This document shows, one piece after another, positions 9,378 through 44,165 of a DNA stretch of 64,000 nucleotides. The notes beneath the pieces were generated by a model. That model was not told the DNA's origin and did not search any database. It saw nothing but the letters and a program-made list of their open reading frames with translations. The DNA lies in the NCBI RefSeq assembly GCF_003918875.1, contig NW_025767657.1, forward strand, positions 1,488,001-1,552,000. The letters are read 5' to 3'. The position numbers and the translations under genes are program-made. Within the stretch, counting starts at the first letter, position 1, and each line of letters starts with the position of its first letter. This DNA comes from Haliotis rubra (taxonomy: Eukaryota).

Positions 9378-9391
9378 GTCACTATGGAAAC
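9378..9391 (+). promoter_or_regulatory. Putative RFX X-box upstream of receptor copy A
   Basis: GTCACTATGGAAAC fits GTHNYYATRRNAAC 14/14; lies ~320 bp upstream of ATG 9713 in a block conserved among paralogs. Confidence 0.5.
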
Positions 9392-9712
9392 TAAAAGTTC
9401 CATGTGTACTGTCTACTCCCCGAAGATGGAAATTCAAGAAAAATCAATAGACATTAAGCATTCAACAAACACATGCATCAACTAATTGTCATTGTAAACA
9501 GCTACGCTGCACTTAAAGTTGTTTTCATACACAAAGCAAATAGGCAAACGATTCACCAAATCCGAGCATTTTTACCAAACATGGCATCAAGTTATATAGA
9601 CTTATATCACATACGTATATCACATGGTCATTGTTAGACAACAGTAGCGCGGTGGTGAAACGTTTTCTTCATTTTATGTTTACTGACAGTTCGCTTTGAA
9701 AAACAAAGAACA

Positions 9713-10873
9713 ATGTGCACCATATTTCTCAATATCTTCGTCCTGCTATATCCCGTTGGCGTGTTATGTGGGACAGAGTTGTCACCTCTGTACAAGTTAC
9801 ACAAAACAGTCCGAGAAGGCTATGATCCACACATTCGACCTATCAAAGATCCGAGAATGACCACCAATGTGACGGCGGACTTTGTGTTGTTTTCTGTAGA
9901 GGAGGTAAATGAAGCCAGTGAAACATTCACCTCGTTTGGGAAATTTAACATCACGTGGTACGATGAATGGCTCGTGTGGAACATTTCAAATCATGCCAAC
10001 ATTCGGAAAATTTACATGGATCTGCACAATATTTGGACGCCAGATCTGACGGTGTCAAACACCGTTGAGAATTACCGCATAATGTCAGATACAAAAGGAC
10101 TCGTGTCCGTGACTAACACAGGATTCATCACTTGGCAGCGGACGATGAGACAGACTACAAAATGCTCCATGGACATGAGCAAGTTTCCCATAGACAAACA
10201 GACATGTTCCCTTCGCCTCGATCAGTGGGTATCTGATAAGAATGAAATGATTTTACAAGGCGGATCAGTGAGGTCGAACTACAAATCGTTTCAAATTCAA
10301 GGAGAATGGATGGAAATTGAAAAGAGTATTGAAACAAAAACTATTTACCCGGGGGATATTACACGGAATGTGATTTTATTTACGTTTACCTTCCAGCGGA
10401 AGCCACTACACGTTGTGATCACCAGTGTCCTGCCTGTGTTCCTGCTGTCGGTTCTCAATCTTGGTGTGTTCCTTCTTCCTCCTGAATCGGGGGAGAAGAT
10501 CTCACTGTGTATCTCCGTATTCTTGTCCTACGCCCTCATCCTGACAGATATCAACGAAGATCTACCCCAATCACTTGCCTCCCTTGCTGTCTTCAGAGTG
10601 TATCTTCTCACAATGTTGTTGGTGAAGGTCATTACTATTTGGGCTACCATCATGGTCTTGAAAAGGTATCACACGGAGATTGGAGTCCTGCAACTGTCGT
10701 CTGCTTCATCCCAAGAAGGTGGTGAAGGCAAGAGTTCAGTGCTCGGTGAAAGTAAAGAACGATGTTACAAAAGGAAGTTGTCAGCAGATGCTCTGAATAG
10801 AGTTTGTTTTGCTGTCATCAGCTTGATAATGATCGTCACAACATCAATTTGTGTAGCGGTTTCACTGTTTTGA
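9713..10873 (+). CDS. Cys-loop ligand-gated ion channel, atypical nAChR-like subunit, copy A (386 aa, uninterrupted CDS)
   Basis: Signal peptide, YDPHIRP, WTPD, Cys loop CSMDMSKFPIDKQTC, M1, PPESGEKISL-M2, M3, short M3-M4 loop, M4; no vicinal Cys in loop C. Confidence 0.95.
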   Translation: MCTIFLNIFVLLYPVGVLCGTELSPLYKLHKTVREGYDPHIRPIKDPRMTTNVTADFVLFSVEEVNEASETFTSFGKFNITWYDEWLVWNISNHANIRKIYMDLHNIWTPDLTVSNTVENYRIMSDTKGLVSVTNTGFITWQRTMRQTTKCSMDMSKFPIDKQTCSLRLDQWVSDKNEMILQGGSVRSNYKSFQIQGEWMEIEKSIETKTIYPGDITRNVILFTFTFQRKPLHVVITSVLPVFLLSVLNLGVFLLPPESGEKISLCISVFLSYALILTDINEDLPQSLASLAVFRVYLLTMLLVKVITIWATIMVLKRYHTEIGVLQLSSASSQEGGEGKSSVLGESKERCYKRKLSADALNRVCFAVISLIMIVTTSICVAVSLF

Positions 10874-11405
10874 TATTTCACATGTGCATTGTGATATGCT
10901 GGCATTGTTTACATCACTCTACTGTTACACCAAGGACGGTGTCGGAACAGACACCAGGAATGGCATTCAGACATTTTACACCAGAATGTTGGAAACCCTT
11001 GTTTCCGAGTGGAGGCTTTAATTATTGAGTCCTCATACTTGCACAGAGCCATCTTAAGTAAAGGTACCTCAAACTTGAATCTAGCCATTTTTAAGTAAAT
11101 ATGTATCTCATGATATGGAGAGACGCCTACTGTATTAAAAATGTATATCAGTATTATTCGAAATAGATAGTGTTTAAATCATACCCCCGAGAGGGTATGT
11201 AAGTCCATGTCTCTCAAGGTAAGTTCGTATCTTAAGTATATTTGTTCTTTTAGGTGATGACTATCGCTTATCCTTATCGCTTATCACAAAGGAGATCTCT
11301 AAATGAGCAAGCATGACTCAGTTATCCACTGTAATGCATTAGAATTGCAGAGGACCTTTATAGATACAGGAATCTTCAAATGTCAGCATTATATCCCAAA
11401 AGGTA

Positions 11406-11630
11406 ACCGCCTCCATGGTGTAGTGGTTAGGGCGTCATACCAAAAGACGTTAAGATATGGTACTTGTTCGTCCCTGCCTGGCACTCGGCATTAATGGGAT
11501 ACAACAAGGACTGGTCAGCTCGGTGTCAGAATAATGTGTCTGAGGGGGGTATTCATGTTTAACTGTGGCACGGTATCTCAGCACGTCGTCATATGAGCGA
11601 AATATTCTTAAGTGCGACGTTAAATCCCAT
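11406..11630 (+). mobile_element. tRNA-derived SINE with V-domain-like body (internally deleted)
   Basis: A-box-like TGGTGTAGTGG; TCATACCAAAAGACGTTAAGATATGGTAC...CCCTGCCTGGCACTCGGCATTAA resembles the V-SINE domain; tail GAAATATTCTTAAGTGCGACGTTAAA. Confidence 0.6.
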
Positions 11631-13592: not shown

Positions 13593-13852
13593 CATGGTTC
13601 CTAGTATGGTGATCTACCTTCAGTTGTTGGTGATCTATAGCCCGTTTTTATATTGTATTGTCTTCGTATATGAAAATACTTTTACATTTTCATGCTAGTT
13701 TTAGACTCTATCTGTTATACTCTAGTTAATTTACAGTCCTTCGATGACTGATTATTTAGCAACTTTAATTTATTGTTTATGTAAAACATTTCTCGTCACT
13801 ATATGGCTGAAATATTGCCGAGGTGACGTTAAATTCTGGCTCACTCACTCAA
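13593..13852 (+). mobile_element. Family L (I/Nimb LINE 3' end) copy
   Basis: Same CATGGTTCCTAG start and (CACT)n tail as the 2317 copy; CACATACATA-type TSD. Confidence 0.8.
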
Positions 13853-15818
13853 TCACATACATATATATGTATGTTTTTTGTTGATCCATTAGTATTTTAC
13901 ATTGTTTATTAATGAATTGATATTAGTTTAGATGTAATGTTTACATGTGTAGCATGGAAAAGTATTCATGGTATGTTTTATATTATGAACAGGTTGATAC
14001 ATTATCATCCACAACATGATTTACAGGGTACATATATTTACATATATTTATATATTATAGATAGATGGAGGCATACATTCTCTATGTCATACATACATTA
14101 TTCCGATTAACTGGATATAATGTCATGCTTAGTATGCCATATTTGTGTTGCATGTGTAACTGCAACAATTAAGATGAAATGTCTTATATAAACTAACAAT
14201 ACCTGTATTGAGTTGAGTTGGGCTTTACGTCACATCGGCATTATTCCAGCCATATAGTGACGATAACAAATCTGCATTAATGAACATTGTGAGTACAGTG
14301 TCAAAATGAGTTTTATTTCAAAAACATATATTCATTACATTGTCATTTAAAAACAGAAAAAGTCATAGCACTAAATTTAAAAGCAGGCAATGTTGTAATG
14401 TGATTTGTTGTCAAATTATGTGACTGTATTCTTATGATCCTCATTGTCACAGGGTGTCAGTTTGTCACGAGTTTGTCACGGGTTTGTCACCAGTTTCTAT
14501 CAGCATAATAAACAGACCTGACACCTAAGCCAGAGTCATCGTTATTAGTACAGAAGCACACGTTGATGGCTGTTACATCTATTCCAATAATGTCAGAGGT
14601 GTTGCAGTACATATTGTGATATATTGACTGGAAGGTTTCTGCCCAAGTAAGAAAATATTATTTACATCATAAATTCATAACAGCTCTCTGTGTGTGACAT
14701 CATCTTCTCAGTTGTTACACCATGCTTTCAGGCTCTCCGTCCCCACTGTCTATGGCTGTATGCCAGTGGTTTACAGATATTTATTTGAAATATTACAACA
14801 AAGTTTTGCGAACATAATGTTAAAGGTAATAATATAACATGATTTTCATGGTCAGTGTTGTTTGCTTCAACAGAATGCACTTCATGAATGTAGTATGTAA
14901 TTATTGTTACTGTATGTCAGTGATTCATTCAGATTCAACTCCAACATGAACATGTGCTAACATGAACTATTGCAAAAATAAAAACGGGATTTAGGTGAAC
15001 TACTTGAGCTTAAATCTCAGGCGACCTCATGTGAACTAAGATCTTTCACTAGTATGCCATTATGCAGCCCTACAAATTTATAGACCTCCACATAATGGGA
15101 ATTCTAGCACGACATTGTGTAATACTCGATTCTGATTGGCTGAGAGCTCATCAAAACCGTACTTAAATGGCAGTTTAAGACCGCTAATTAAAGTGACCGA
15201 TTCACCGCGTATGAATACAATGAACTAGTTGACCCTATTGTTTGTATACAAACATGTCAGACATCGGCAATTTCTATCTCGGCAGCATCTTCGGTGTTTT
15301 TGAAGTAAAAAGCGAATGGTTTGAAGAGGAATTTCTTTACCCTAATCCCAGTGAAGAAACTACGAAGCTGGAAAATCCGTCAGCAGCGCAAAAGCGGCAG
15401 TATATTCAAACCGGGTCCAGATCAAGCGGGCATACACACGTCACCCCACACCATAGGCGCCCGACTCTGATATATTTATAAGTATGACCTCTATATACAA
15501 AATACTAGTATAAGAAAGGTGTGTCAGTAAATCGAAACAAAATGGCGGCCCGGCTCGGCTCGGTTTCGGTCTGACAAACGCTTCCATCGCTTTGACCGTT
15601 GAATAAACTGCACAATTTATGCTCAGTTGACCTCTGTAAAGTACCTTGCGTATCACTAACCTGGTGATTTTATTCTCATTTAAAGCTTTCAATAATTTTG
15701 CCGTCCAATCTCGCACGAAGTCAGGACATATGCCCGGAAGTAAACAAATCTCAGGCTACAGACCCGCACCGAATCTCTGATTGGATAGCGTCTTCTATTA
15801 TTCCCACCTCTTCCAAAC

Positions 15819-17583: not shown

Positions 17584-17830
17584 ATGCTGATACCACGTTA
17601 ATCGCATTCCTGTATGTGATATTGTGATTATCGCTATCATAGAAAGAAGCATGAAAATATTTATGTGTTTTTCTGAACAGAACATCGTCAGATTTGATCA
17701 CAATTCAGTTTATCGTTCAAAGAATTCACGCAAGGTTGTCTGGAATAACTCCTGTCTGTGCTCTTTTGGCTGAATGTTCCAACATTCCCATGTTCCTCTG
17801 GTATCGACACAATTCACTTAAATACCTTCT

Positions 17831-19913: not shown

Positions 19914-21068
19914 TTAAAACGGTAAGACAGCTAAACACATTGAGGTTGTAGTGATCATTATTAAGCTGATGACGGCAAAACAAACTCTATTCAGAGCATC
20001 TGCTGACCATTTCCTTTTGTACCATCTTCCATTACGCTCGTCAAGCATTAAACTGTTGAGGTCTCGTCCTTCCTGGCATGAAGCACCTTTACTGTGACGA
20101 GTGCCAATCTCGGTGTGATACCTTTTCAAGATGGCGACGGTGGCCCAAATAGTGATGACCTTGACCAACAACATTGTGAGGAGATAGACTTTGAAGATAC
20201 CAAGGGAATCGGGTGTGTGTGGAAGGTCCTCATTGATATCTGTCAGGATGAGGGCATAGGACAGGAACACGGAGATGCACAGTGAGATCTTCTCCCCTGA
20301 TTCAGGGGGAAGAAGAAACACGCCAAGATTGAGAACCGACAGCAGGAAGACAGGCAGGGCGCTGGTGATCAGAAAGTGTAGGGGCCTCCGCTGGAAGCTA
20401 AACTTAAAAGAAATTTCGTTCTGAGACAAAGTTTCTCCATAGGTATAAGTCTTTGTTTTTATGCTTTTTTCAATTTCTTTCCATTCTCCGTGACTTTGAA
20501 ACGGATTGTAGTTTGACATCACTGAACCACCTTGTAAAAATACTTCATTGTTGCTGGATATCCATTGAATAAGCCGCACGTCACATGTCTGCGAATCCAT
20601 GGGAAACTTGCTCATGTCCATGGAACATTTTGTAATCTGTCTCATTGTCCGGTACCACGTTACGAAGCCCGTGTTCCTGACAGACACGATTCCTGTCGTG
20701 TCTGACAGTAAGTGGTAGTCCTCAACGCTATTTAACACAACAAGATCTGGCGTCCAAACATGGTGTAGAGGAAGTTTAATTTCCTGAATTCCGTCATGAT
20801 CAGAGGTATTCCACACGAGCCATTCATCATACCATGTGATGTTGAACGTCCCAAAAGAGATAAAATTTTCACTAGCTTCATTGAGGTCCTCTACAGAGAA
20901 CATTGAAAAGTCTACCGTCACGTTTGTAGCTACTCTTGAGTTTTTGATAGGTCGAATGTGTGGCTTGTAGCCTTCAATGACTGTTTCATGTAAATTGTAC
21001 AAAGGGGACACCTTATGTCCAAATATCATGCCAAAGGGATAGAGCAGGACGAAGAGATTCAGAAACAT
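19914..21068 (-). CDS. Cys-loop nAChR-like subunit, copy B (384 aa, uninterrupted CDS)
   Basis: Same architecture as copy A; Cys loop CSMDMSKFPMDSQTC; PPESGEKISL. Confidence 0.95.
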   Translation of the reverse strand: MFLNLFVLLYPFGMIFGHKVSPLYNLHETVIEGYKPHIRPIKNSRVATNVTVDFSMFSVEDLNEASENFISFGTFNITWYDEWLVWNTSDHDGIQEIKLPLHHVWTPDLVVLNSVEDYHLLSDTTGIVSVRNTGFVTWYRTMRQITKCSMDMSKFPMDSQTCDVRLIQWISSNNEVFLQGGSVMSNYNPFQSHGEWKEIEKSIKTKTYTYGETLSQNEISFKFSFQRRPLHFLITSALPVFLLSVLNLGVFLLPPESGEKISLCISVFLSYALILTDINEDLPHTPDSLGIFKVYLLTMLLVKVITIWATVAILKRYHTEIGTRHSKGASCQEGRDLNSLMLDERNGRWYKRKWSADALNRVCFAVISLIMITTTSMCLAVLPF

Positions 21069-22069
21069 GCTGGATACAGCTTACTTAGTGTTAGTTTGAT
21101 GTAATTCGCTGGATTATTAATGTAGTTTTTTCTGTGCAGTTGGTACATCCAGTGACAATAACGTCTCACCTTCAGTCTGTTGTCTCGTGCTGAAGATACA
21201 CACTGTTGGATGGATTTACTTAATTTCTCTGGAAAGTTACACAGGAAGGATAAAACATTTGATCCGTTTGAACAATCACAAAAAAACTTGGAGAGATCCC
21301 TTCCCTGAAAAATGTTTGAACTTCACTGACGGAGACCAGGTGATAGTGAAACAGTGAATACCTATGATGGTTAATAAACCAATATCCGTGTAGCTGTTTA
21401 CAGTGCTGAGTAGTCCATTACCCCGCCAAAAGGAATGTTTGATGAACACTAATGGACTATTGATTTTGTCACCACTGTTAGACATTAACCATAGAAACAT
21501 TAGCTTCATTCGACTATGCATGATTGCGCCATCCATTCGTGAATGTAGACATTTTCCAATCTGACGCGCCAGTGACTAAATTCAAGTCATATGCCATTCC
21601 CTATATTTCTTTGTACCATACGTTCCCGGGTTGTTTGTTTTCCAAGGAGAACAGATAAATCATCTGTTGCCTTGGCATGATCATTACAATCAGGAGTATA
21701 TGACGGACCACAAGGGGTGCAGGAAATACCCCTTTACGCAAGCACATATTGTCAACAGCATTTGACGGTAATGTATAAACAGTTGTGAAATCGACTGAAC
21801 TTGAAGTAGAGATATTCGTGACTTTGTAATGGATTTTGTCATTTTCATTATGGTTATAAAATGTTTGTGTGCTGTCTTTCATATGATGTCTCTAAAACCT
21901 TATGTTTGGTTAACAAGACATATTTATGTTCACAAATGTGTCCCGGTTCTTATTGTAGTTTGTGCATGGCATGCTATATACCTGCAACCAGACATATATC
22001 ACAGGTGACTTCTCACTTGTTGACATTAGCAACCTTCGTCAACAATTCAAATATGGACCTAGATATCGT

Positions 22070-25783: not shown

Positions 25784-26923
25784 TTAAAGCAGTAAGACAG
25801 CTAAACAAATTAACGTTGTGGCAGTCATTATCAAGGTGATGACAGCAAAACAAACTCTATTCAGAGCATCTGCTGACAGCTTCCTTTTGTACCATCTTTC
25901 ATTACGCTCGTCAAGCATTAAACTGTTCACTTCACGCCCTTGCTTATTCTGACGAATGCCAGTCTCGGTGTGATACCTTTTCAAGATGGCGACGGTGGCC
26001 CAAATAGTGATGACCTTGACCAACAACATTGTGAGGAGATAGACTTTAAAGATACCAAGGGAGTCGGGTGAATGGGGTAAATCTTCGTTGATATCTGTCA
26101 GGATGACGACATAGGACAAGAAGACAGAGATGCTCAATGATATCTTCTCCCCTGATTCAGGAGGAAGGAGAAACACACCAAGATTGAGAACCGACAGCAG
26201 GAAGACAGGTAGGACGCTGGTGATCACAAAGCGGAGAGGATTCCGCTGGTAGGTATATGTGAACGAAATTTCGTTCTGAGACAAAGTTTCCCCGAAGGTA
26301 AAAGTTTTTGTTTTTAGACATTTTTCAGTTTCTTTCCATTCTCCGTGACTTTGAAACGAATTGTAGATTGACATCACTGACCCACCTTGTAAAAATACTT
26401 CATTGTTGCTGGACATCCATTGAATAAGCCGCACGTCACATGTCTGCGAATCGATGGGAAACTTGCTCATGTCCATGGAACATTTTGTAATCTGTCTCAT
26501 TGTCCGGTACCATGTTACGAAGCCCGTGTTCCTGACAGACACGATTCCTTTCGCGTCTGACAGTAACTGGTAGTTATCAACGCTATTTGACACAACCAGA
26601 TCTGGAGTCCAAACATGTTGTAGAGGAAGTTTAATTTCCTGAATTCCGTCATGATCAGAGGTATTCCACACGAGCCATTCATCATACCACGTGATGTTGA
26701 AAGTCCCAAAAGAGATTAAAGTTTCACTAGCTTCATTGAGGTCTTCTACGGAGAACATTGAAAAGTCTACCGTCACGTTTGTAGTTACTCTTGAGTTTTT
26801 GATAGGTCGAATGTGTGGCTTGTAGCCTTCAGTGACTGTTTCATGTAACTTGTACAAAGGGGACACCTTATGTCCAAATATCATGCCAAGGGGATATAGC
26901 AGGACAAAGAGATTCAGAAACAT
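25784..26923 (-). CDS. Cys-loop nAChR-like subunit, copy C (379 aa), recent tandem duplicate of B
   Basis: Near-identical to B with a short deletion in the M3-M4 loop; Cys loop CSMDMSKFPIDSQTC. Confidence 0.95.
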   Translation of the reverse strand: MFLNLFVLLYPLGMIFGHKVSPLYKLHETVTEGYKPHIRPIKNSRVTTNVTVDFSMFSVEDLNEASETLISFGTFNITWYDEWLVWNTSDHDGIQEIKLPLQHVWTPDLVVSNSVDNYQLLSDAKGIVSVRNTGFVTWYRTMRQITKCSMDMSKFPIDSQTCDVRLIQWMSSNNEVFLQGGSVMSIYNSFQSHGEWKETEKCLKTKTFTFGETLSQNEISFTYTYQRNPLRFVITSVLPVFLLSVLNLGVFLLPPESGEKISLSISVFLSYVVILTDINEDLPHSPDSLGIFKVYLLTMLLVKVITIWATVAILKRYHTETGIRQNKQGREVNSLMLDERNERWYKRKLSADALNRVCFAVITLIMTATTLICLAVLLL

Positions 26924-28418: not shown

Positions 28419-30013
28419 CTAAATAATTAAGCTATTAAAACAACTAGTTACAATACTTTTTAAGAACTGAAGCTTGGGTTTATTTAGGTGAACTTACAAA
28501 AGAACTATCAAAACATTCTTTTTGACAGATTTTAGTTTACTACACACTCATTTCCAAAGACGTGTTTGAAAATGAAAAATCTGATGTTTACACCTGACAC
28601 CGTTCATAATGATAAATAAAAGCATGAGACGCTAAATAACACCTTGACGTTTCATTGGTCTTTTATGAGGGAGTCTACATACATCAAATATCACGGAAAC
28701 TGCAGGCAGGGAAACAAACAAGGACCTGCTTTGTCGGCCTGTGGAAGATTTGTGCATTGATTGGTTTATGAAATATCATTTTATCATATATTGAATGCCA
28801 AGTGATTGTAAATAGTCGACTCTGGACCAGACCTGAGTCCCCTGATTAATATCGTGAGCATCGACATACACAATTGGGATTCATGGACATTCATCAAGAC
28901 TTCGTTAAGCAAACATGAGTTGTTGAAGACCAATTTAAAACCCGGATCTTCAGAGATCCGATGCCCCCATCGATGTAAGTTTGGTACGATATCGACTTTA
29001 TCCTGATATTTGTTTTATGTTTATCAGTATCCCCTATGCGTTTACTGATGAAGAGTCGGACTCGCCACTGTCGGCGCAGATATTTGGCATGGGTGATAGG
29101 ATTGCGTCCTCCCAGATGAGTAAGGACTTGGTCATCAAGGTCACTGGAAGCAAAAGTATTGTAAGTCCACACAGTCTCTAGTATGGGGGCAAACGTCCGT
29201 TGTTTCCGATCGCTTTCCAGATTTTATCTCTTATCGTTAGTTCTTAGCGTATGATTTTCCTTAAGCTAGTTTTAAGAAATATGTGAGTTTACTGTCCTTC
29301 ATTGACGGGGTTTTATAATTTATATGTTTTTTATCATGAATTTGGAAACTGTTTTAGACACGTAATGGCTGAAATACTGTCGATGTGACTAAAAATTTAT
29401 TATCACTCACGCACTCCATGAAAGGTTCTGCACTTTCTTTACTGTTTAATCTATATTATCCCTGTGCAGACATGTTCAAGACATCCAAACGAATAAGATC
29501 TTTACTTCAATAATTAAAGATACATACGCACCAGTTTCAAATGATTAAGGCTTTCGCTCATTTCAACAAATGTGAGCCAAACATAATGCACGAGATTTGT
29601 AAACAGTGCAAACGTATCAGAATGAACATAGTGTGCATGGATTATAAGACTAAACAAGCTACACAAATTGTCAATGTTAGAATCAATTGTCAGGTTGATG
29701 GCTGAAAACCAAACTCCATTCAGAGCCTCTGCTGTACGTTCATCATCAAGCATTGAATTGCCGCCATCAAGGCGTTCTTGGGAAGGAACAGACGACAGTT
29801 GTTGGGAGGGCATCTGAGTGTGATATCTTTTCAAGATGGCGACGGTGGCCAAAGCAGTAATCACCTTTACCAACAACATTGTGAGGAGATAGACTCTGAA
29901 GATGACAAGGCAGTCGAATGAATGGGGTGGACCTTCAGTAATATCTGTCAGGATGAGGGCATGGGACAAGAACACAGGAATACACCGTGAGATCTTACGC
30001 CCAGATTGAGGCT

Positions 30014-30168
30014 GACTGAGTTTGGCTTTACGCCGCTTTGAGCAATATTCCAGCAACATCACGGCGGGGGACACCAGAAATGGGCTTCACACGTTGTACC
30101 CATGTGGGGATTGGAACCCGGGTCTTTGGCGTGACGAGCCAACGCTTTAAGCACTAGACTAGGACTAC
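30014..30168 (-). mobile_element. Family T tRNA-SINE inserted in pseudogene D
   Basis: Reverse complement of the family T head, B box and tail. Confidence 0.85.
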
Positions 30169-30403
30169 TACTGATTGACAGCAGAGAGACAGGCAGGATG
30201 TTGGTAATGACATAGTTTAAGGGATTCCGCTGGAATGTAAATGTAAACAAAATTTCGTTCTAAGACAAAGTTTCCCCGTAGAAAGGTCAAGCATGTCCTG
30301 CTGTAGACAGGCAGGATGCTGGTAATGACATAGTTTAAGGGATTCCGCTGGAATGTAAATATAAACAAAATTTCGTTCTGAGACAAAGTTTCCCCGTAGA
30401 AAG

Positions 30404-31114
30404 GTCAAGCATGTCCTGCTTGACTGTATAGATTTTTCCATCACAAGGGATAAATATTTCAATGTCAAAACAGTGAAGGGTCTTTTTTATAGTGTTAATT
30501 ATCATTAATTTTTTTAATTTTAAAAAGAAATAGAATTACTTGATAAATTTTAATTGATGTGTTTTGTATATACACATATGTACATATATATTTTATTGTA
30601 GGTAGTTTGAATTAGCAACTTAGATTGTTAGTGTCTGTACCCTCACAGGGGGTTGAAATATTGTAAAATTATTGTCCTCCTGTGGGGGTACGGACGTCCC
30701 AAAACATTCAAGGTAAATTTCTACTAGATTTTTTAAAGCAGTATGTTTGTAATTTTGAATTATGGCTAGATTTGACTACAATCGCCAGTGGCTGAAGGGA
30801 TGGTGTAAATCCAGTTAGGGTCAATGCGGGTAGGAAAGGCACTGTAAGTCCCCATGGTCCCTAGTATGGTGATCAACCTTCAGTTCTTGGCGATCTATAG
30901 CCCATTTTTACATTGTATTGTCCAGAAATAATTTTCTACTTTTAAAGATATATGTTAACTGGTTTTAACTCAATCTGTGATAATCTAGTGGTTTTACTGT
31001 CCTTCGTTGACAGGGTTTTATATATTTTAGGTATGCATTATGAATTTAGAACTAGTTTTAGTCACGACCTGGCTGAAATATTGCCGATGTGACTTTAAAT
31101 CTCACACTCACTCA
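30404..31114 (+). mobile_element. I/Nimb LINE 3' end (ORF2 C-terminus plus 3' UTR), longest family L copy
   Basis: VKHVLLDCIDFSITRDKYFNVKTVKGLF (C-terminal zinc-knuckle region of I-clade ORF2), then the family L UTR and (CACT)n tail. Confidence 0.8.
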
Positions 31115-31329
31115 CCCCACCCCCCAACCCACGTAGATATGTGTTCTTGTTCTGATACTCTTTTCAATTTCCCTCAATTCTCTTCGTCTTTTAAAGAAAT
31201 TATCGTCTGATATCACTGATCCACCTTGTAAAAACACATCATTGTTACCAGATATCCATTGAACAATGCGCAGTCTACACGTCTGTGTGTCTAGGGGAAA
31301 CTTGCTTATGTCCATGGAGCATTGCTTAT

Positions 31330-31679
31330 GTACATTTTCCTACAATCGCCAGCGGCTGAAGGGTTGGTGTAAATCCAGCTAGGGTCCATGCAGGTAGCAA
31401 AAGTAATGTAAGTCCCCATGGTTCCTAGTATGGTGATCTACCTTCAGTTGTTGGCGATCTATAGCCCGTATTTTATATTGTATTGTCTTCTTTGATTGGA
31501 ATATTTTAGCTTTGCTCGCTAGTTTTATATTTATATCTGTGATTCTCTAGTCTTTTTACTGTCCATCGTCGACAGGTTTTAATCTTCAAAATGTTTCCAC
31601 TTTTTATTGTATGGATTGTTTTCGTCACGATATGGCTGAGATATTGCCGATGTGACGTTAAATAGTAACTCACTCACTA
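31330..31679 (+). mobile_element. Family L copy in pseudogene D
   Basis: CCTACAATCGCCAGCGGCTGAAGG...GACGTTAAA..CACTCACT. Confidence 0.85.
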
Positions 31680-32360
31680 CATCTTCTGTACAGATCAAGG
31701 TCGTCGTACATATCTAAATGGTTTGACCTTTCTCTAAATATACGGTTTCCAAACATGGTGTAGTGGCATGTAACTTCTCTGAATGTTGGCATGATCTGAA
31801 TGGTTCAACGGAGCCATTCATGTGATGTTGAAAGTCCCAAACGTGGTTGAAGTTTCACTGGCTTAATTAATCTCCTCCACAGAAAACAACATAAAGTCCA
31901 CCGTCACATTTGTGGCCATTTTCGGAGTTTTGATTGGTCGAATGTATGGATCGTAGCCTTCTCTGACTCTTTTGTGTAACTTGTAGAGAGGTGAAATCTC
32001 AGCCCCATAAAACACGCCAAGGGGATATAGCAGAACGAAAATATTCAGAAGCATACCAGGGAATGCAAACGGTGTGCATTCTGTATCTGTCTAATGAAGC
32101 AAATGTCTCACCCCCTCGCTGCTGTTGTCTGTCTCGCAGTGAACTGGTAATATAATATAATATCTATATCGTTATGCCTTATTCGGTAAATATACTGATT
32201 TACTTAATGGTTTGAATATATGCTTTGTGCATGAAAACAAAATTCAAATTCAGTTAGCTATTTACAATGACTGATGCATGTGTTTGTTAAATACTTAACG
32301 TCTATTGATTTTTCTTCGATTTCCATGTCCAGGGAGTAGACATTACACATTGAACTATTA

Positions 32361-32374
32361 GGTTCCATAGTGAC
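32361..32374 (-). promoter_or_regulatory. Decayed X-box upstream of pseudogene D
   Basis: GTCACTATGGAACC, one mismatch to the copy A/E motif, at the homologous position. Confidence 0.4.
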
Positions 32375-32839
32375 TGGATTGTCTATCTGACTGGGCCATC
32401 CGTTTGAGTATCGTTTGTGAATGTAATAGTGTGCTCCATATCAGAATATAAGGATATGTTCGAAAAATGACTTTTTGTGGGTGTGTTTGTAAAGTGGCCA
32501 CATCAGGGCAGTTGTCAGTTGAGTACCTGCGGAGATGTACGTTCCAAATGCCTATAAAAGCTCTTCGTTTCATCAATAATGTCATCGTCATCAATCAGAA
32601 ACATCTCCATTTGGCCTTTCGATATGAATCAGTACTTTTCTTACAAAATGTATATTTTCAAGACTACAAATGATACCCATCTATTTTCAAAGTTCAATCC
32701 ACCTCGATCTGGACTCTTTTGGGCCATAAAACATTGCAAATGTTACTCTTTAACTAAACATTAATATTTACAAATCCAAACTCCGATGCATTGAAACACA
32801 CACACACACCCCACCCCCACCCCACCCACCCCCACCCCC

Positions 32840-36094: not shown

Positions 36095-36096
36095 TA

Positions 36097-39000
36097 TTAA
36101 GTTTGTCTTAGAAATATGACTGGGACTGCCAAGTCTACATATCCTCTTATAAACCCCCTCACTAGGCCTGCTCTTCTAAAATATACCTCACTAAGCTTGA
36201 TCTTCTTCTAAAGGCCACCTCATCAAGCCTGATCTTCTTCTAAAAGCCACATCAAGTCTGATCTTCTTCCAAGAGCCACCTCGTCCAGCCTGATCTTCTT
36301 CTAAAAGATTCTTCATCAAGCCTGATCTTCTTCTAAAAGCCGCCTCATCAAGCCTGATCGTCTTCTAAAAGCCACCTCATTAAGCTTAATCTTCTAAAAG
36401 ACGCCTCGTTAAGCCTGATCTTCTTCTAAAAGACTCTTCATCAAGCTTGATCTTCTAAAAGGCCACCTCTTCAAGTCTGATCTAAAAGCCATCTTCTTCT
36501 AAAAGAAGATAATTAAGCTTGATCTTCTTAAAGGCCGCCTCGTCAAGCCTGATCTTCTGAAAGCCACCTCATTAAGCCTTATCTTTTTCTAAAAGACACC
36601 TCATCAAGTCTGATCTTCTTCTAAAAGCCACTTCATCAAGCTTGATCTTCTTCTAAAAGCCACCTCATCAAGTCTGATCTAAAACCCACCTCATCAGGCC
36701 TGACCTAAAAGCCACCTCATCAAGCCTGATCTAAAACCCACCTCATCAAGCTTGACCTTCTTCTAAAAGCCATCTAATCAAGCCTGATCTTCTTCTTAAA
36801 GCCATCTCATCGAGCCTGATCTTCTTCTAAAAGCCACCTCATGATGCCTGATCTTTTTAAAGCCACCTCATCAAGCCTAATCTTCTTCTAAAATCCACAT
36901 CATCAAGCCTGATCTAAAAGCCACCGAATCAAGCCTGATCGTCTTATAAAGCCGCCTCATCAAGCCTGATATTCTTCTAAATGTCACCTCATAAACCTGA
37001 TCTTCTTCTAAAAGCCACTTCATTAGGCTTGACCTTCTTCTAAAAGCCGCCTCGTTAAGCCCGATCTTCGTCTTAAGCTGCTTCATTAAGCATGATCTTC
37101 TTCTAAAAGCCACCTCATTAAGCTTGATCTTCTTCTAAAAGCCACCTCATCAACTCTGATCTAAAAGCCACCTCATCAGGCCTGATCTAAAGGCCACCTC
37201 ATGAAGTCTGATCTAAAAGCCACCTCATCAGGCCTGATCTAAAAGCCACCTCATCAGACCTGATCTAAAAGCAACTTCATTAAGCTTGATCTATTAAGTT
37301 TGTCTTAGAAAGACATGACTGGGACTACCAAGTCTACATGTCCTCTTATAAACCCCCTTCCCAGGCCTCATCTTCTAAAATATACCTCATTAAGCTCGAT
37401 CTTCTCCTAAGAGCCACCTCATCAAGCCTGATCTTCTTCTAAAAGATTCCTCATCAAGCCTCATCTTCTTCTAAAAGCCACCTCATTAAGCTTGATCTTC
37501 TAAAAGCCGCCTCGTTAAGCCCGATCGTCTTCTTAAAACCACCTCATCAAGCCTGATCGTCTTGTAAAAGCCACCTCATTAAGCTTGATCTTCTAAAAGC
37601 CGCCTCGCTAAGCTTGATCTTCTAAAACCCGCCTCGTTAAGCCTGATAATTTTCTTAAAGCCACCTCATTAAGCCTGATTTTCTCCTTAAAGACACTTCA
37701 TCAAGCCTGATCTTCTCCTAAAAGCCATTCCATTAAGCTTGATCTTCTTCTAAAGCCACCTCATCAAGTCTGATCTAAAAGCCATCTCATCAAGCCTGAT
37801 TTTCTTCTAAAAGACACCTCATCAAGCCTGATCTTCTTCTTAAAGCTACCTCATCAAGTCTGATCTAAAACCCACCTCATCAGGCCTGATCTAAAAGCCA
37901 CCTCATCAAGCCTGATCTAAAACCCACCTCATCAAGCTTGACCTTCTTCTAAAAGCCATCTCGTCAAGCCTGATCTTCTGAAAGCCACCTCATTAAGCCT
38001 TATCTTTTTCTAAAAGACACCTCATCAAGTCTGATCTTCTTCTAAAAGCCACTTCATCAAGCTTGATCTTCTTCTAAAAGCCACCTCATCAAGTCTGATC
38101 TAAAACCCACCTCATCAGGCCTGACCTAAAAGCCACCTCATCAAGCCTGATCTAAAACCCACCCATCAAGCTTGACCTTCTTCTAAAAGCCATCTAATCA
38201 AGCCTGATCTTCTTCTTAAAGCCACCTCATCGAGCCTGATCTTCTTCTAAAAGCCATCTCATGACGCCTGATCTTTTTAAAGCCACCTCATCAAGCCTAA
38301 TCTTCTTCTAAAATCCACATCATCAAGCCTGATCTAAAAGCCACCGAATCAAGCCTGATCGTCTTATAAAGCCGCCTCATCAAGCCTGATATTCTTCTAA
38401 ATGTCACCTCATAAACCTGATCTTCTTCTAAAAGCCACTTCATTAGGCTTGACCTTCTTCTAAAAGCCGCCTCGTTAAGCCCGATCTTCGTCTTAAGCTG
38501 CTTCATTAAGCATGATCTTCTTCTAAAAGCCACCTCATTAAGCTTGATCTTCTTCTAAAAGCCACCTCATCAACTCTGATGTAAAAGCCACCTCATCAGG
38601 CCTGATCTAAAGGCCACCTCATGAAGTCTGATCTAAAAGCCACCTCATCAGGCCTGATCTAAAAGCCACCTCATCAGACCTGATCTAAAAGCAACTTCAT
38701 TAAGCTTGATCTATAAAGTTTGTCTTAGAAAGACATGACTGGGACTACCAAGTCTACATGTCCTCTTATAAACCCCCTCCCCAGACCTCATCTTCTAAAA
38801 TATACCTCATTAAGCTCGATCTTCTCCTAAAACCCACCTCATCAAGCCTGGTCTTCTTTTAAAAGCCACATCATTAGGCTTGATCTTCTTCTAAAAGCCG
38901 CCTCGTTAAGCCCAGCTTCATCTAAAGCTGCTTCATTAAGCATCTTCTTCTAAAAGCCACCTCATTAAGCTTGATCTTCTTCTAAAAGCCACCTCATCAA

Positions 39001-40690
39001 CTCTGATCTAAAAGCCACCTCATCAGGCCTGATCTAAAGGCCACCTCATGAAGTCTGATCTAAAAGCCACCTCATCAGGCCTGATCTAAAAGCCACCTCA
39101 TCAGACCTGATCTAAAAGCAACTTCATTAAGCTTGATCTATTAAGTTTGTCTTAGAAAGACATGACTGGGACTACCAAGTCTACATGTCCTCTTATAAAC
39201 CCCTTCCCAGGCCTCATCTTCTAAAATATACCTCATTAAGCTCGATCTTCTCCTAAGAGCCACCTCATCAAGTCTGATCTTCTTCTAAAAGATTCCTCAT
39301 CAAGCCTCATCTTCTTCTAAAAGCCACCTCATTAAGCTTGATCTTCTTCTTAAAGCCGCCTCGTTAAGCCCGATCTTCTTCTTAAAACCACCTCGCCTCA
39401 TCAAGCCTGATCGTCTTCTAAAAGCCACCTCATTAAGCTTGATCTTCTAAAAGCCGCCTCGCTAAGCTTGATCTTCTAAAACCCGCCTTGTTAAGCCTGA
39501 TCATTTTCTTAAAGCCACCTCATTAAGCCTGATCTTCTTCTTAAAGACACTTCATCAGGCCTAATCTTCTCCTAAAAGCCATTTCATTAAGCTTGATCTT
39601 CTTCTAAAGCCACCTCATCAAGTCTGATCTAAAAGCCATCTCATCAAGCCTGATCTTCTTCTAAAAGACACCTCATCAAGCCTGATCTTCTCTTCTTTAA
39701 GCTACCTCATCAAGCCTAATTTCCTTCTAAAAGCCACCTCATCAACCCTGATCTAAAAGCCATCTCATTCAGCTTGATCTAAAAGCCGCCTCGTTAAGCC
39801 TGATCTTCTTCTTACAGCCATCTCATCAAGCTTGATTTTCTTTTAAAGCTGCGCCATTAAGCGAGATTTCTTCTAAAAGCCACCTCATTGAGCACGATCT
39901 TCTTCTGCAGCTTTTTCATTAAGCATGATCTTCTTCTAAAGCCACATCATCAGGCCTGATCTAAAAGCCACCTCATCAGGCCTTCTTCTAAAAGCCACCT
40001 CTTCAGGCCTGATATAAAAGCCACTTCATCAAGCTTGATCTTCTTCTAAAAGCCACCTCATCAGGCCTGGTCTTCTTCTAAATGCCACCTCATCAAGCCT
40101 GATCTTAAAGCCACCTCATCAAGCCTGATCTAATTGCCTCCTCATCAAGCTTGATCTTCTTCTAAAAGTCACCTCATCAAGCCTGATCTAAAAGCTACCT
40201 CATCAAGCCTAGTCTTCTTCTAAAAGCCATTTTATCAAGTCTGATCTTCTAAAAGCCACATCATCAAGCCTTATCTTGTTCTAAAAGCCACTCTATCACG
40301 CCTGATCTAAAAGCCACCTCACCGAGTCGAGATCTTCTTCTAAAAGCGACCTCATCGAATCTGATCAAAAAGCCACCTCATCAAGCTTGATCTTCTTCTA
40401 AAGCCACTTCATCAAGCCCGATATAAAAGCCACTTCATCAAGCCTGATATAAAAGCCACCTATCAAGTCTGATCTTCTTCTAAAAGCCACCTCATCAGGC
40501 CTGAACTTCTAAACGTCACTTCATCACGCCTGATCTTCTAAAAGCCACTTCATCAAGCCTGATCTTCTAAAAGCCAGCTAATCATGTCTGATCCAAAACC
40601 CACCTCATTAAGTCTGATATTCTTCTAAAAGCCACTTCACCAAGCCTGATCTTCTTCTAAACGCCACCTCACCAAGTCTGATCTTTTTCA
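36097..40690. repeat. Satellite array of ~27-33-bp monomers with higher-order repeats
   Basis: Monomer AAGCCTGATC(TTC)0-2TAAAAGCCACCTCATC; ~1420-bp duplication (identical translated ORFs at 36877 and 38297); non-monomer linker at 36095, 37292, 38712 and 39139. Confidence 0.95.
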
Positions 40691-42041: not shown

Positions 42042-42420
42042 GGGCGTGGTGGGCGAGCTGGCTAAGGCGCCAGGCTAGTAATCCAGCGAGTTTGAGGTGC
42101 CGGGATAGAGCCCACCTGTGACAGGGTGTGAAAAACCTTGGAGTCAACTTTGTGTGCAGACTCTTTCAGTGTTGTCACAACAATCCGTTGGTATATGACA
42201 AGATGGTGGCCACATGAATACGTGCAAACACCTAGTTTGCAACCTAGTTGCAGCAACGTGCAGTAAACTTGGACAAAGCTGTGAATGGGTACCTCGTAAG
42301 GATGGGAAAGCCACATTAACTCGGTGCGCTTGAGACTGACATCCTATGATCGAGGGAAAAACAGCCTAGCTGGAACTCGGCGCTATATAAATAAATTATA
42401 ATAAAATAATAATAATAAAT
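42042..42420 (+). mobile_element. tRNA-derived SINE with L2-type tail
   Basis: A/B-box-like head; GAGTCAACTTTGTGTGCAGACTCT and GCTGTGAATGGGTACC central motifs; ends GCGCTATATAAAT(AAT)n. Confidence 0.7.
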
Positions 42421-42482
42421 CACTATTATTTACATTTATCACATCAAACATTGTCATGTCAGATTTGCTCCAGCAGGACAGA

Positions 42483-43643
42483 TCAAAACAGTAAGAGAGC
42501 TAAACAAACTGCTGTTGTGGCAATCATTATCAAGCTGATGGCTGGAAAACATACTCTGTTCAGAGCATCTGCTGACATCTTCCTTTCATGATACTTTCCT
42601 TTACAATCATCAAGCACTGAATTTCCACCATCAAGTCCTTCCTGGGATGAAGCAGACGACAGCTGATGAGCGCTCATCTCAGCGTGATACCTTTTCAAGA
42701 TGGCGACGGTGGCCAAAACAGTAATCACTTTGACCAACAGCATCGTGAGAAGATAGACTTTGAAGGTAACAAGTGAGTCGAATGAATGGGGTAGATCTTC
42801 GTTGATATCTGTCAGGATGACGGCATAAGACAAGAACACTGAGATACATAGCGAGATCTTCTCCCCTGATTCAGGAGGAAGAAGAAACACGCCCAGATTG
42901 AGAACCGACAGCAGAAAGACAGGCAGGACACTTGTGATCACAAAGTGCAGGGGCTTCCGTTGGAAGGTAAATGTAAACGAAATTACGTTCCATGTTGTTT
43001 CCCCGAGGAAAAGAGTTTTTGTTTTGGTACCCGTTTCCCTTTCTATCCATTCCCCTCGACTTTGAAATGAAGTGTAGTCTGACATCACTGACATCACTGA
43101 CCCACCTTGCACAAACACATTATTACTATTGGATGTCCACTGAGAAATACGCAGGCTACACGTCTGTTTGTCTATGGGAAACCTGCTCATGTCCATGGAG
43201 CATTTAGTGATCTGTCTTATCGTCCGGTACCAGGTGACAAATCCTGTGTTCGAGACAGACACGAGTCCTTCTGTATCTGACAAAAAGCGAAAGTCCTCAA
43301 CGGCATTTGCCACAACCAGATCTGGCTTCCACACTTGATGTAGTGGCAAGTACATTTTCTGAATGTTGGCATGATCTGAAATGTTCCAAACGAACCACTC
43401 GTCGTACCACGTGATGTTGAAAGTCCCAAACGAGGTTAAAGTTTCACTGGCCTCATTTACCTCCTCCACAGAAAACAACGTAAAATCCACCGTCACATTT
43501 GTAGCCAGTCTGGGGTTTTTGATAGGTCGAATGTGTGGATTGTAGCCTTTGGTGACTGTTTCATGTAACTTGTACAGAGGCGAAAAGTCAGTTCCGCATG
43601 CCATGGACAGGGCATGTAGCAGAACGAACACATTCAGAAACAT
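42483..43643 (-). CDS. Cys-loop nAChR-like subunit, copy E (386 aa from the MFLNVF start)
   Basis: Start aligned with the paralog signal peptides; Cys loop CSMDMSRFPIDKQTC; PPESGEKISL; four TM segments. Confidence 0.92.
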   Translation of the reverse strand: MFLNVFVLLHALSMACGTDFSPLYKLHETVTKGYNPHIRPIKNPRLATNVTVDFTLFSVEEVNEASETLTSFGTFNITWYDEWFVWNISDHANIQKMYLPLHQVWKPDLVVANAVEDFRFLSDTEGLVSVSNTGFVTWYRTIRQITKCSMDMSRFPIDKQTCSLRISQWTSNSNNVFVQGGSVMSVMSDYTSFQSRGEWIERETGTKTKTLFLGETTWNVISFTFTFQRKPLHFVITSVLPVFLLSVLNLGVFLLPPESGEKISLCISVFLSYAVILTDINEDLPHSFDSLVTFKVYLLTMLLVKVITVLATVAILKRYHAEMSAHQLSSASSQEGLDGGNSVLDDCKGKYHERKMSADALNRVCFPAISLIMIATTAVCLALLLF

Positions 43644-44151
43644 GGTGGTGAGGCTTCCTCTGTATTGGATGGTAAACTGGCAATGTGAAGTTAGTATGCT
43701 TCCAAAACACAAACGTCTCGCCTCCTTGCGGTTGATGTCTGTCTCTCTATGAACTGGTACAATGTCATTTATACAGGATTTTTCATTTGGTTTATCTGTT
43801 ATGGTTTGCTGAATCGTTTGAGTCTCTGTTTTCTGCTCGTTGCTATCGTTACATTGTTGGGGATTGACGTTTTTCCACATTATCACTGATAGCGCAAAAT
43901 ACTCATTTTCTGGATGATGTGTCACTAGAAGCCGAAAAGGTTTGCTTTGTACTTGGAATCTCAGAGAAAGAATGCGTGGTGTTATAACCATTACGGAATG
44001 AATGGTAAAACATTTCATGTGCATGTCGAAACAATGGATATTCCAACCTGAAAACAAGTCAATCGTGACAGCTATTTGAGTGAAGAGAAATATGTGTTTG
44101 TTCAATACTTAACATTTATTGATTTGTCAGATATTACACGTCGAACCATTA

Positions 44152-44165
44152 GTTTCCATAGTGAC
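44152..44165 (-). promoter_or_regulatory. Putative RFX X-box upstream of receptor copy E
   Basis: GTCACTATGGAAAC, identical to the copy A motif, within the homologous upstream block. Confidence 0.5.

What the first reader, a model, noticed from the sequence alone, without database searches (positions are those of the whole stretch)
9378..44165. RFX X-box conserved upstream of receptor paralogs, degraded in the pseudogene
Seen: the upstream blocks of A (~9320-9560), D (~32200-32435) and E (~44090-44165) are homologous. GTCACTATGGAAAC is identical in intact A (9378) and E (44152), has one mismatch in pseudogene D (32361), and the homologous position is eroded in B and C. Known: GTHNYYATRRNAAC is the RFX/DAF-19 X-box that marks ciliated sensory-neuron genes. 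Inference: A and E are driven in ciliated sensory cells, which independently supports a chemosensory role; B and C may have shifted expression.
Basis: partly seen in the sequence, partly recalled or inferred. Interest (0 to 1): 0.75.

Follow-up and report, generated by a model that had tools for sequence, protein, structure and literature searches.

The report
Candidate RFX site upstream abalone channels
A 14-base sequence that fits the binding site of the cilia-gene regulator RFX is conserved upstream of some abalone nicotinic-receptor-like channel genes. It is one of several conserved pieces of a shared promoter, it does not track whether the gene is intact, and nothing yet shows where these genes are expressed.

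Summary
GTCACTATGGAAAC is exact at 9378 (+) and 44152 (-), has one mismatch at 32361 (-), and is eroded at the same place upstream of B and C.

The window is Haliotis rubra. The "receptors" are Cys-loop ligand-gated channels (nAChR-like), each with a single coding exon.

The 14-mer is the 5' part of a shared upstream block of about 200 bp, found only upstream of this gene family in the ~250 kb examined, in H. rubra and H. cracherodii.
- **For a real site:** between deep paralogs the flanks are about 50% identical, yet the 14-mer is 14/14. One H. cracherodii copy changed it to GTTACCATGGAAAC, a stronger X-box. It scores within the range of validated C. elegans X-boxes.
neighbouring islands such as AAATCAATAG are conserved as well or better. 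Four intact genes (B, C, G, Hcra_4) have lost the site. Broken genes (H, Hcra_3) keep perfect copies. The one mismatch in D is no more than neutral drift predicts.

No RNA data exist for this locus, so expression in ciliated sensory cells is untested.

Verdict: a plausible ancestral RFX site that some paralogs have lost; a new candidate instance of a known motif; moderate interest. An earlier scan note on other DNA of this genome (s1-333111) flagged a similar Cys-loop receptor cluster.

The parts
9378..9391 (+). X-box-type 14-mer GTCACTATGGAAAC upstream of paralog A
   Evidence: Exact match. PWM score 16.0 bits.
9325..9532 (+). Conserved upstream block of A. In order: X-box, TAAT/GTTC/TGTA island, AAATCAATAG, ACAAACA, GTAAACA
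   Evidence: nhmmer E=2e-47; alignments; motif coordinates.
9713..10873 (+). Paralog A: intact Cys-loop channel, 386 aa, single coding exon
   Evidence: ORF; Pfam LBD plus TM; nAChR alpha is the best PDB match.
44152..44165 (-). X-box-type 14-mer upstream of paralog E
   Evidence: Exact match. PWM score 16.0 bits.
44038..44229 (-). Conserved upstream block of E
   Evidence: nhmmer E=4.5e-33.
43839..43852 (-). Second, weak X-box-like site GTAACGATAGCAAC, about 200 nt before the ATG of E. Also present in G, and as GTAACAATAGCAAC in H
   Evidence: One mismatch to the consensus; 11.9 bits.
42483..43643 (-). Paralog E: intact Cys-loop channel, 386 aa. The NCBI model P0002 starts at the same ATG
32361..32374 (-). 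X-box-like site GTCACTATGGAACC upstream of the broken paralog D
   Evidence: One mismatch; 10.3 bits.
32220..32425 (-). Conserved upstream block of D
   Evidence: nhmmer E=7.5e-49; 80% identical to the A block.
29691..32054 (-). Paralog D: a pseudogene in four pieces, interrupted by SINE-like insertions
   Evidence: tblastn pieces; repeat families D16 and D18.
21357..21550 (-). Conserved upstream block of B. The X-box position (about 21503-21516) is eroded
   Evidence: nhmmer E=8e-36; alignment; best PWM score in the block is 5.8 bits, at another position.
19914..21068 (-). Paralog B: intact, 384 aa
27276..27491 (-). Conserved upstream block of C. The X-box position (about 27420-27436) is eroded, with an insertion in the spacer
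   Evidence: nhmmer E=2.6e-36; alignment.
25784..26923 (-). Paralog C: intact, 379 aa

Best explanation
The 14-mer is the most upstream element of a compact promoter module of about 200 bp. This module has travelled with a Haliotis clade of nAChR-derived Cys-loop channel genes through their tandem duplications.

**Shown**
- The module predates the split between H. rubra and H. cracherodii.
- In several lineages (A, E and its near-copies, Hcra_1, Hcra_3) the 14-mer has been held fixed, or changed only in ways an X-box allows, while surrounding bases diverged to about 50% identity.
- In other lineages (B, C, G, Hcra_4) it decayed at the neutral rate while the other islands of the module stayed.

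**Inferred**
- The element is an X-box bound by an RFX dimer. It would add expression in RFX-positive cells, most likely ciliated sensory cells, to whatever the other conserved elements specify. Those elements are a TAAT-containing island, AAATCAATAG, and two forkhead-type RYAAAYA words.
- Paralogs that lost the X-box have diverged in regulation.
- Loss or retention of the site is independent of whether the coding sequence is intact.
For: - **Motif presence.** Exact motif at 9378 and 44152, one mismatch at 32361.
- **Block distribution.** The block occurs only upstream of family members: 15 full copies and one partial copy in about 218 kb searched from two species.
- **Conserved island.** The motif is 14/14 identical between A-E, A-Hcra_3 and E-Hcra_3, where flank identity is 46-53% (binomial P<0.001 each).
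- **X-box-shaped change.** Hcra_1 reads GTTACCATGGAAAC. Both of its changes raise the X-box score (19.5 and 20.7 bits on the two strands). Only 6 of 819 possible double changes do as well.
- **Score in the real range.** 16.0 bits is the 23rd percentile of sites drawn from the matrix of 30 validated DAF-19 sites. Sites of at least 16 bits outside the blocks number 5 in 218 kb.
- **Tolerated variants.** F and Hcra_2 begin with AT, as do 5 of the 30 validated sites.
- **Sister subfamily.** A similar site, GTCACCATAGTAAC, lies at -568 in H. rubra and -602 in H. asinina upstream of a subfamily only 37-39% identical in protein. It differs by one base from the validated xbx-7 site.
- **Literature.** Conservation of sequence and position between species is the criterion that predicted dRFX targets in Drosophila. 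RFX and FoxJ1 are expressed in cilia-bearing sensory cells of a mollusc.
Against: - **No expression or binding data.** No RNA run holds the locus.
- **Not the best-conserved element.** The AAATCAATAG island, and the window shifted 3' onto GGAAAC plus TAATGGTTC, score higher. Among intact genes the motif ranks only in the top 26% of windows.
- **Wrong conservation profile.** Across all 13 copies, per-position conservation does not follow X-box information content (rho=-0.05). The degenerate position 11 is invariant, while the normally invariant A13 is the most variable bar one.
- **Frequent loss.** 4 of 7 fully intact genes lack the site.
- **Distance.** 335-522 nt before the ATG is further than most validated C. 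elegans sites, which lie at -60 to -285. The transcription start site is unknown.
- **Target class.** In C. elegans, X-boxes mark mainly core cilium genes, not cell-subtype genes such as receptors.
- **Sister-subfamily site could be chance.** P is about 0.14. It is absent from 10 other genes of that subfamily, and the block HMM finds no homology there.
- **Predictive value.** A single X-box match is not predictive on its own.
Confidence: 0.45

Rival explanations
1. The conserved 14-mer is functional but is read by other factors. One example is a GGAA-core factor acting with a homeodomain protein on the adjoining TAAT island. The fit to the RFX consensus would then be a coincidence, found by comparing a conserved island with a memorised list of motifs.
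For: - The invariant core across all copies is GGAA, and conservation runs on 3' into TAATGGTTC rather than stopping at the X-box edge.
- Per-position conservation does not track X-box information content.
- B and C keep GGAAGC or TGAAGC together with the downstream islands.
- The 5' half, GTCACT, is the weaker half-site.
Against: - The full 14 bases, including the 5' half, are identical across paralogs whose flanks are about 50% identical.
- Both changes in Hcra_1 move towards the palindromic X-box optimum.
- Matches of at least 16 bits are rare, at about 1e-5 per position.
Confidence: 0.3
2. It is a real RFX site, but it does not report ciliated sensory neurons. RFX would drive or repress these genes in motile-ciliated epithelia, in the germ line or in non-ciliated neurons, so the site says nothing about chemosensation.
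For: - RFX factors have non-ciliary and non-sensory targets, for example in mouse spermiogenesis, in immunity and in 5-HT regulation (titles listed).
- Expanded molluscan nAChR genes are reported to be expressed in early development and in immune and stress responses.
- X-boxes are uncommon on cell-subtype-specific genes in C. elegans.
Against: - In invertebrates the best-documented RFX targets are genes of ciliated sensory neurons.
- Cephalopod nAChR-derived chemotactile receptors set a precedent for a sensory role of such channels.
Confidence: 0.15
3. The identity is by descent alone. The motif is a chance match inside recently duplicated DNA and is under no selection.
For: - A-D and E-F-G-H are recent duplicates with 70-95% flank identity, so their shared motif carries little information.
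- Pseudogenes keep perfect copies.
- The site is absent from many intact genes.
Against: - The motif is 14/14 identical between A, E and H. cracherodii copies although the flanks are only 46-59% identical. Cross-species identity cannot be explained by gene conversion.
- The motif window is in the top 8% of the block for conservation.
Confidence: 0.05
4. The block is transcribed, as a 5' exon or upstream ORF, and is conserved as RNA or as a small peptide rather than as a DNA binding site.
For: - The block of A and D can be read as a 33-37 codon ORF starting at the ATG inside the motif (read directly from the sequence).
- The real transcription start site is unknown.
Against: - In E the frame ends after 10 codons because of a 24-nt deletion. 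Differences between A and D are mostly non-synonymous.
- The ATGGAA/TTCCAT palindrome of A is not kept in E.
- TATA-like and donor-like elements lie downstream of the block.
Confidence: 0.05

Closest known systems
DAF-19/RFX X-box promoters of C. elegans ciliary genes (consensus GTHNYY AT RRNAAC)
   Same: - A 14-bp imperfect palindrome in sense orientation upstream of the ATG.
- It fits the consensus and scores inside the range of 30 validated sites.
- Near-identical validated examples exist: xbx-7 GTCACCATAGGAAC, osm-5 GTTACTATGGCAAC, xbx-6 GTTTCCATGGAAAC.
- A second, weaker site nearby in E, G and H recalls multi-X-box promoters.
   Different: - It lies further from the ATG (335-522 nt against mostly 60-285 nt).
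- The target is a receptor/channel gene family rather than core cilium machinery.
- Neither binding nor dependence on RFX has been shown.
- Half of the paralogs have lost it.
[quoted passage not shown] 2007, PMC2375033)
   Same: - The argument has the same logic: a site conserved in sequence and in distance from the ATG across species, within 1 kb upstream.
- The abalone site fits one of their consensus forms (RYYVYY N1-3 RRHRAC). The Hcra_1 variant fits their restricted form GYTRYY N1-3 RRHRAC.
   Different: - The comparison here is among paralogs and co-orthologs in two or three abalone species, not strict one-to-one orthologs.
- There is no mutant or reporter test.
Intronless, tandemly arrayed nAChR expansions of lophotrochozoans (Jiao et al. 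2019, PMC6896357)
   Same: - Single-coding-exon nAChR-like genes of about 385 aa in tandem and inverted arrays, with pseudogenes among them.
   Different: - That paper does not analyse promoters: a search of its text found 0 uses of 'promoter', 'cilia' and 'Haliotis'.
- The shared promoter block, and the putative short 5'UTR intron, are additions made here.
Cephalopod chemotactile receptors (nAChR-derived contact chemosensors)
   Same: - Intronless nAChR-derived channels in clusters.
- Protein A lacks the vicinal cysteines of loop C, and the residues aligned to alpha Y93 and Y198 are not aromatic (alignment).
   Different: - Placement of these abalone genes in the CR or CR-like clades was not tested.
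- The best solved-structure matches are muscle-type nAChR alpha and 5-HT3A.
- A sensory role in abalone is unproven.

Membership tests
RFX/DAF-19 X-box target promoter | 14-bp imperfect palindrome matching GTHNYY AT RRNAAC | tested here: met
   Exact consensus matches at 9378 and 44152. The consensus wording was checked in a paper.
RFX/DAF-19 X-box target promoter | Score within the range of experimentally validated X-boxes | tested here: met
   16.0 bits, the 23rd percentile of matrix-drawn sites. Hcra_1 scores 19.5/20.7 bits; the subfamily-2 site scores 17.5 bits.
RFX/DAF-19 X-box target promoter | Proximal position upstream of the start of the gene | tested here: inconclusive
   The sites lie at -335 (A), -522 (E) and -320 (D) from the ATG, and at about -510 to -520 in F, H, Hcra_1 and Hcra_3. 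This is within the 1 kb used in Drosophila but beyond most C. elegans sites. The transcription start site is unknown.
RFX/DAF-19 X-box target promoter | Conservation of sequence and position between species beyond that of the flanks | tested here: met
   0-2 mismatches between H. rubra and H. cracherodii copies against 5.7-7.6 expected from the flanks. Other islands of the block are conserved as well or better.
RFX/DAF-19 X-box target promoter | RFX binding, and dependence of expression on RFX or on the site | not testable with these tools
   Needs EMSA, DAP-seq, CUT&RUN or a reporter assay.
RFX/DAF-19 X-box target promoter | Expression in ciliated cells | not testable with these tools
   No RNA run holds the E locus. 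Only DNA contigs could be laid on it.
Cys-loop ligand-gated ion channel (nAChR-like) | Extracellular ligand-binding domain followed by a transmembrane domain | tested here: met
   Pfam PF02931 (E from 1e-34 to 1e-39) and PF02932 in A, B, C and E. The best PDB matches are nAChR alpha and 5-HT3A.
Cys-loop ligand-gated ion channel (nAChR-like) | Alpha-type agonist site (vicinal Cys-Cys in loop C, full aromatic box) | tested here: not met
   In the alignment of A to muscle alpha, the CC pair is absent and the residues at Y93 and Y198 are not aromatic. W149 is kept. Checked only for A and only by pairwise alignment.
Cephalopod chemotactile receptor / CR-like clade | Phylogenetic placement inside the CR or CR-like clade | not tested
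No chemotactile receptor is among the best 60 PDB matches of A.

The most novel reading that the evidence does not exclude
An ancestral promoter combining an RFX site with forkhead-type words targets a gastropod clade of nAChR-derived channels to ciliated chemosensory cells, in parallel with the cephalopod chemotactile receptors. Paralog-by-paralog loss of the X-box (B, C, G, Hcra_4) would then record the family's spread into other cell types. The X-box state would become a sequence-only predictor of which of the many expanded molluscan nAChR-like genes are sensory.
Probability: 0.25. Interest if true: 0.6.

Novelty: new member of a known kind. Interest (0 to 1): 0.4.

Why it matters
Molluscs carry tens to hundreds of intron-poor nAChR-like genes whose functions are mostly unknown. 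Only the cephalopod chemotactile receptors have been tied to sensation.

A conserved RFX site would give a cheap, testable handle on which abalone paralogs act in ciliated sensory cells. It would also offer a worked example of duplicates diverging in regulation through loss of a single promoter element. Abalone chemosensation matters for larval settlement and aquaculture.

As it stands, this is a well-supported phylogenetic footprint with a plausible factor assignment, not a demonstrated regulatory link.

Tried and rejected
- **RNA evidence.** The run search found no RNA holder of window 42300-44500. The three holders behave as genomic DNA. Laying four runs gave only DNA contigs and a repeat hit at 42300-42361. 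The transcription start site, the splicing and the tissue of expression therefore remain unknown.
- **Homology between the two subfamilies' promoters.** The block HMM found nothing in the subfamily-2 loci (best E=2.4). Shared short words such as TGTAAATAG are only suggestive.
- **X-box as a family-wide mark.** Rejected. Ten of the 13 subfamily-2 genes examined have no site scoring 13 bits or more within 1.5 kb upstream.
- **Link between X-box state and coding integrity.** Rejected.
- **Block as a dispersed repeat.** Rejected. Every copy lies upstream of a family member or a remnant of one.
- **Block as a small ORF or hairpin.** Rejected. The frame is broken in E and the palindrome is not kept.
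- **Other near-matches in the window.** The sites at 48132 and 5139, and those at 15953 and 47628, are unrelated. The first two have no flank homology; the last two sit in a repeat pair.
- **Literature.** No paper in the library holds X-box, RFX and mollusc together.
- **Positive control not done.** X-boxes upstream of abalone IFT or BBS genes could not be examined, because no tool-derived query sequence for those genes was available.


Full report
**What is in the window**

The window is Haliotis rubra scaffold QXJH01000092.1. A locus fetched through an annotated protein is 100% identical to window 30669-53643.

The "receptor paralogs" are five copies of a channel gene of about 385 aa with a single coding exon:
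- A, 9713-10873 (+)
- B, 19914-21068 (-)
- C, 25784-26923 (-)
- D, in pieces between 29691 and 32054 (-), interrupted by SINE-like insertions
- E, 42483-43643 (-)

All intact copies carry Pfam Neur_chan_LBD and Neur_chan_memb, and their best solved relatives are nAChR alpha and 5-HT3A subunits. In the alignment of A to muscle alpha, the Cys-loop and W149 are kept. The vicinal cysteines of loop C are absent, and the residues at Y93 and Y198 are not aromatic. The family matches the intronless, tandemly arrayed nAChR expansions described in lophotrochozoans (PMC6896357).

**The observation**

GTCACTATGGAAAC is exact at 9378 (+) and 44152 (-), and has one mismatch at 32361 (-). With up to 2 mismatches there are 7 matches where 0.71 are expected. 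The degenerate consensus has 3 sites against 0.70 expected, but two of those three are paralogous copies, so the excess comes from shared descent.

Each site lies in sense orientation 320-522 nt upstream of its ATG. The wording of the consensus, GTHNYY AT RRNAAC, is as published for DAF-19 targets.

**More copies**

I fetched further family members:
- Two on the same scaffold, 280 kb away: F and G (locus L001).
- A contig with two copies about 95% identical to E: H and H2 (L005).
- Four H. cracherodii copies: Hcra_1 to Hcra_4 (L004, L002).

In the protein tree the eight intact or nearly intact copies (F has a C-terminal frameshift) form one clade. It contains (B,C) and (A,(E,(F,G))), with Hcra_1 and Hcra_4 unresolved. 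A long branch separates it from a second subfamily that is only 37-39% identical.

An HMM of the upstream block finds 15 full copies and one partial copy, all upstream of family members or their remnants, and nothing elsewhere. The block is therefore part of the duplicated gene unit and not a dispersed repeat.

**State of the site in each copy**

Scores use a matrix built from the 30 validated 14-nt C. elegans X-boxes in Table 1 of PMC3245922:

| Copy | Score (bits) | Sequence or note |
|---|---|---|
| A, E, H, H2, Hcra_3 (two tandem blocks) | 16.0 | 23rd percentile of sites drawn from the matrix |
| Hcra_1 | 19.5 / 20.7 | GTTACCATGGAAAC, scored on the two strands |
| Hcra_2 | 13.6 | begins with AT |
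| F | 13.2 | begins with AT |
| D | 10.3 | one mismatch to A and E |
| L004:20435 | 4.9 | 5' half degraded |
| G, B, C, Hcra_4 | about 0 or below | no X-box left at the homologous position |

Five of the 30 validated sites also begin with AT, so F and Hcra_2 remain plausible sites.

**Is it more conserved than its surroundings?**

- **Deep pairs.** The flanking block columns are 46-59% identical, yet the 14-mer shows 0 mismatches (A-E, A-Hcra_3, A-Hcra_3b, E-Hcra_3) or 2 (A-Hcra_1, E-Hcra_1), where 5.7-7.6 are expected (P from <0.001 to 0.009). Identity across species cannot come from gene conversion.
- **Hcra_1.** Its two changes both raise the X-box score and make the site more palindromic. 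Only 6 of 819 possible double changes do as well.
- **Sliding windows.** The motif ranks in the top 8% of 14-column windows across all 13 copies. The AAATCAATAG island, and a window shifted 3' onto GGAAAC plus TAATGGTTC, rank higher. Among intact genes alone the motif is only in the top 26%.
- **Per-position profile.** Conservation over all copies does not follow X-box information content (rho=-0.05). This is partly because copies that lost the site decay at random. A-B shows 6 mismatches against 6.6 expected, and A-Hcra_4 shows 5 against 5.7.

The 14-mer is therefore a genuine footprint in some lineages, one of several in a compact module, and it was fully released from constraint in others.

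**Pseudogene versus intact gene**

D differs from A at 1 of 14 positions where 2.8 are expected from 80% flank identity (P=0.20).
- Broken copies: H and Hcra_3 keep perfect sites, and Hcra_2 keeps a 13.6-bit site.
- Intact copies: B, C, G and Hcra_4 have none.

**The wider family**

In the 37%-identical subfamily, GTCACCATAGTAAC lies at -568 in H. rubra and at -602 in H. asinina upstream of related genes. A tandem H. asinina copy has ATCACCATAGGAAC. These are one base away from the validated xbx-7 and osm-6 sites.

The H. rufescens relative has diverged there (6.4 bits). Ten other genes of that subfamily have nothing comparable, and the block HMM detects no homology. With a background of about one 13-bit site per 28 kb, one such hit among roughly seven gene groups has P of about 0.14. 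This is suggestive only. The X-box is not a family-wide mark.

**Other elements of the module**

Downstream of the motif the block holds, in order:
- A conserved TAATGGTTC/ATGTGTAATGTCT island.
- AAATCAATAG, nearly invariant in all copies.
- ACAAACA and GTAAA[C/T]A, both forkhead-type RYAAAYA words.

RFX acts together with forkhead factors on cilium genes in C. elegans (PMC10393296). RFX and FoxJ1 are co-expressed in cilia-bearing sensory cells of a chiton (PMC5648526). Such short words are common by chance, so I treat this only as a lead.

About 60-120 nt before each ATG, all copies share AG|GTGAGACGTTT (GC in place of GT in E, G and Hcra_4), followed by TACTRAC and then CAG. In A, D, E, F and G a TATA-like word lies just upstream. 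This looks like a core promoter, a very short non-coding exon and a 45-62 nt intron in the 5'UTR. It is unverified.

**Expression**

No RNA run holds the E locus. The holders behave as genomic DNA, and laying them showed DNA contigs only. The step from "X-box" to "ciliated sensory cells" therefore rests on what is known of invertebrate RFX targets. It is weakened by two points: X-boxes mainly mark core cilium genes rather than cell-subtype genes, and a lone match is not predictive.

**Verdict**

It is one of several promoter elements, it has been lost repeatedly in intact paralogs, it is unrelated to pseudogene status, and no expression data are available.

- Probability of a functional RFX site driving expression in ciliated sensory cells (the best explanation, as scored): about 0.45.
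- Probability of an RFX site acting in some other cell type: about 0.15.
- Probability of another factor acting on the same bases: about 0.3.

This is a new candidate instance of a known motif class. I found no paper in the library linking X-box or RFX to molluscan receptor genes.

Noticed in passing
window 60756-60769: The strongest X-box match in the window is GTTGTCATGGAAAC, read on the other strand as GTTTCCATGACAAC (20.9 bits). The reverse-strand reading is identical to the validated C. elegans bbs-9 site. It lies inside a 43-codon minus-strand ORF (60671-60802), within the span where a Med13 gene on the minus strand should run. It is probably a chance match in coding sequence.
   Followed up: partly
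window 9655-9708; 43660-43722; 32102-32113; the same place in all paralogs: All 11 paralogs aligned, in both species, share a donor-like AG|GTGAGACGTTT (GC instead of GT in E, G and Hcra_4), a TACTRAC branch-like word and a CAG, 60-120 nt before the ATG. This suggests a short 5'UTR intron in genes otherwise called intronless. A TATA-like word (E: 43767-43773) lies just upstream in A, D, E, F and G. No RNA is available to confirm any of this.
   Followed up: partly
window 43839-43852 (-); L001:9809; L005:9457: A second, weaker X-box-like site, GTAACGATAGCAAC (11.9 bits, one mismatch to the consensus), lies about 200 nt before the ATG and is conserved in E, G and H. Promoters with several X-boxes are known in C. 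elegans.
   Followed up: partly
L006:16199 and L007:7471; L007:22562: GTCACCATAGTAAC lies at -568 and -602 upstream of related genes of a 37%-identical Cys-loop subfamily in H. rubra and H. asinina. It sits at the 5' edge of the alignable promoter. A tandem H. asinina copy has ATCACCATAGGAAC.
   Followed up: yes
window 29691-32054: Pseudogene D is split by two SINE-like insertions (about 30854-31119 and 31418-31682). Their repeat families also occur at 2318-2579, 13594-13853, 18611-18870 and 33241-33503. D also holds a 116-nt tandem duplication (30187-30420).
   Followed up: no
window 36149-40684: A satellite-like array of about 4.5 kb, built of 26- and 32-nt units with higher-order repeats, lies downstream of E. 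The NCBI model of E (P0002, 410 aa) extends by an intron to about 40669, into this array. That extension looks like an annotation artefact.
   Followed up: no
window 35118-35867: Remnant of a Tc1/mariner-type transposase (HTH_Tnp_Tc3_2 plus DDE_3).
   Followed up: no
window 16972-17634 and 28068-28418: Tandem arrays of 35-nt units and of 93-nt units lie between the paralogs.
   Followed up: no
window 5714-6799: A 361-codon ORF on the plus strand has no Pfam match and no similarity to the channel family.
   Followed up: no
L005 (H. rubra QXJH01001606.1): A separate 143-kb contig carries at least two tandem units about 95% identical to the E gene and its promoter, spaced 11.3 kb apart. The first unit has frameshifts. 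They are either recent duplicates or an uncollapsed haplotype.
   Followed up: partly
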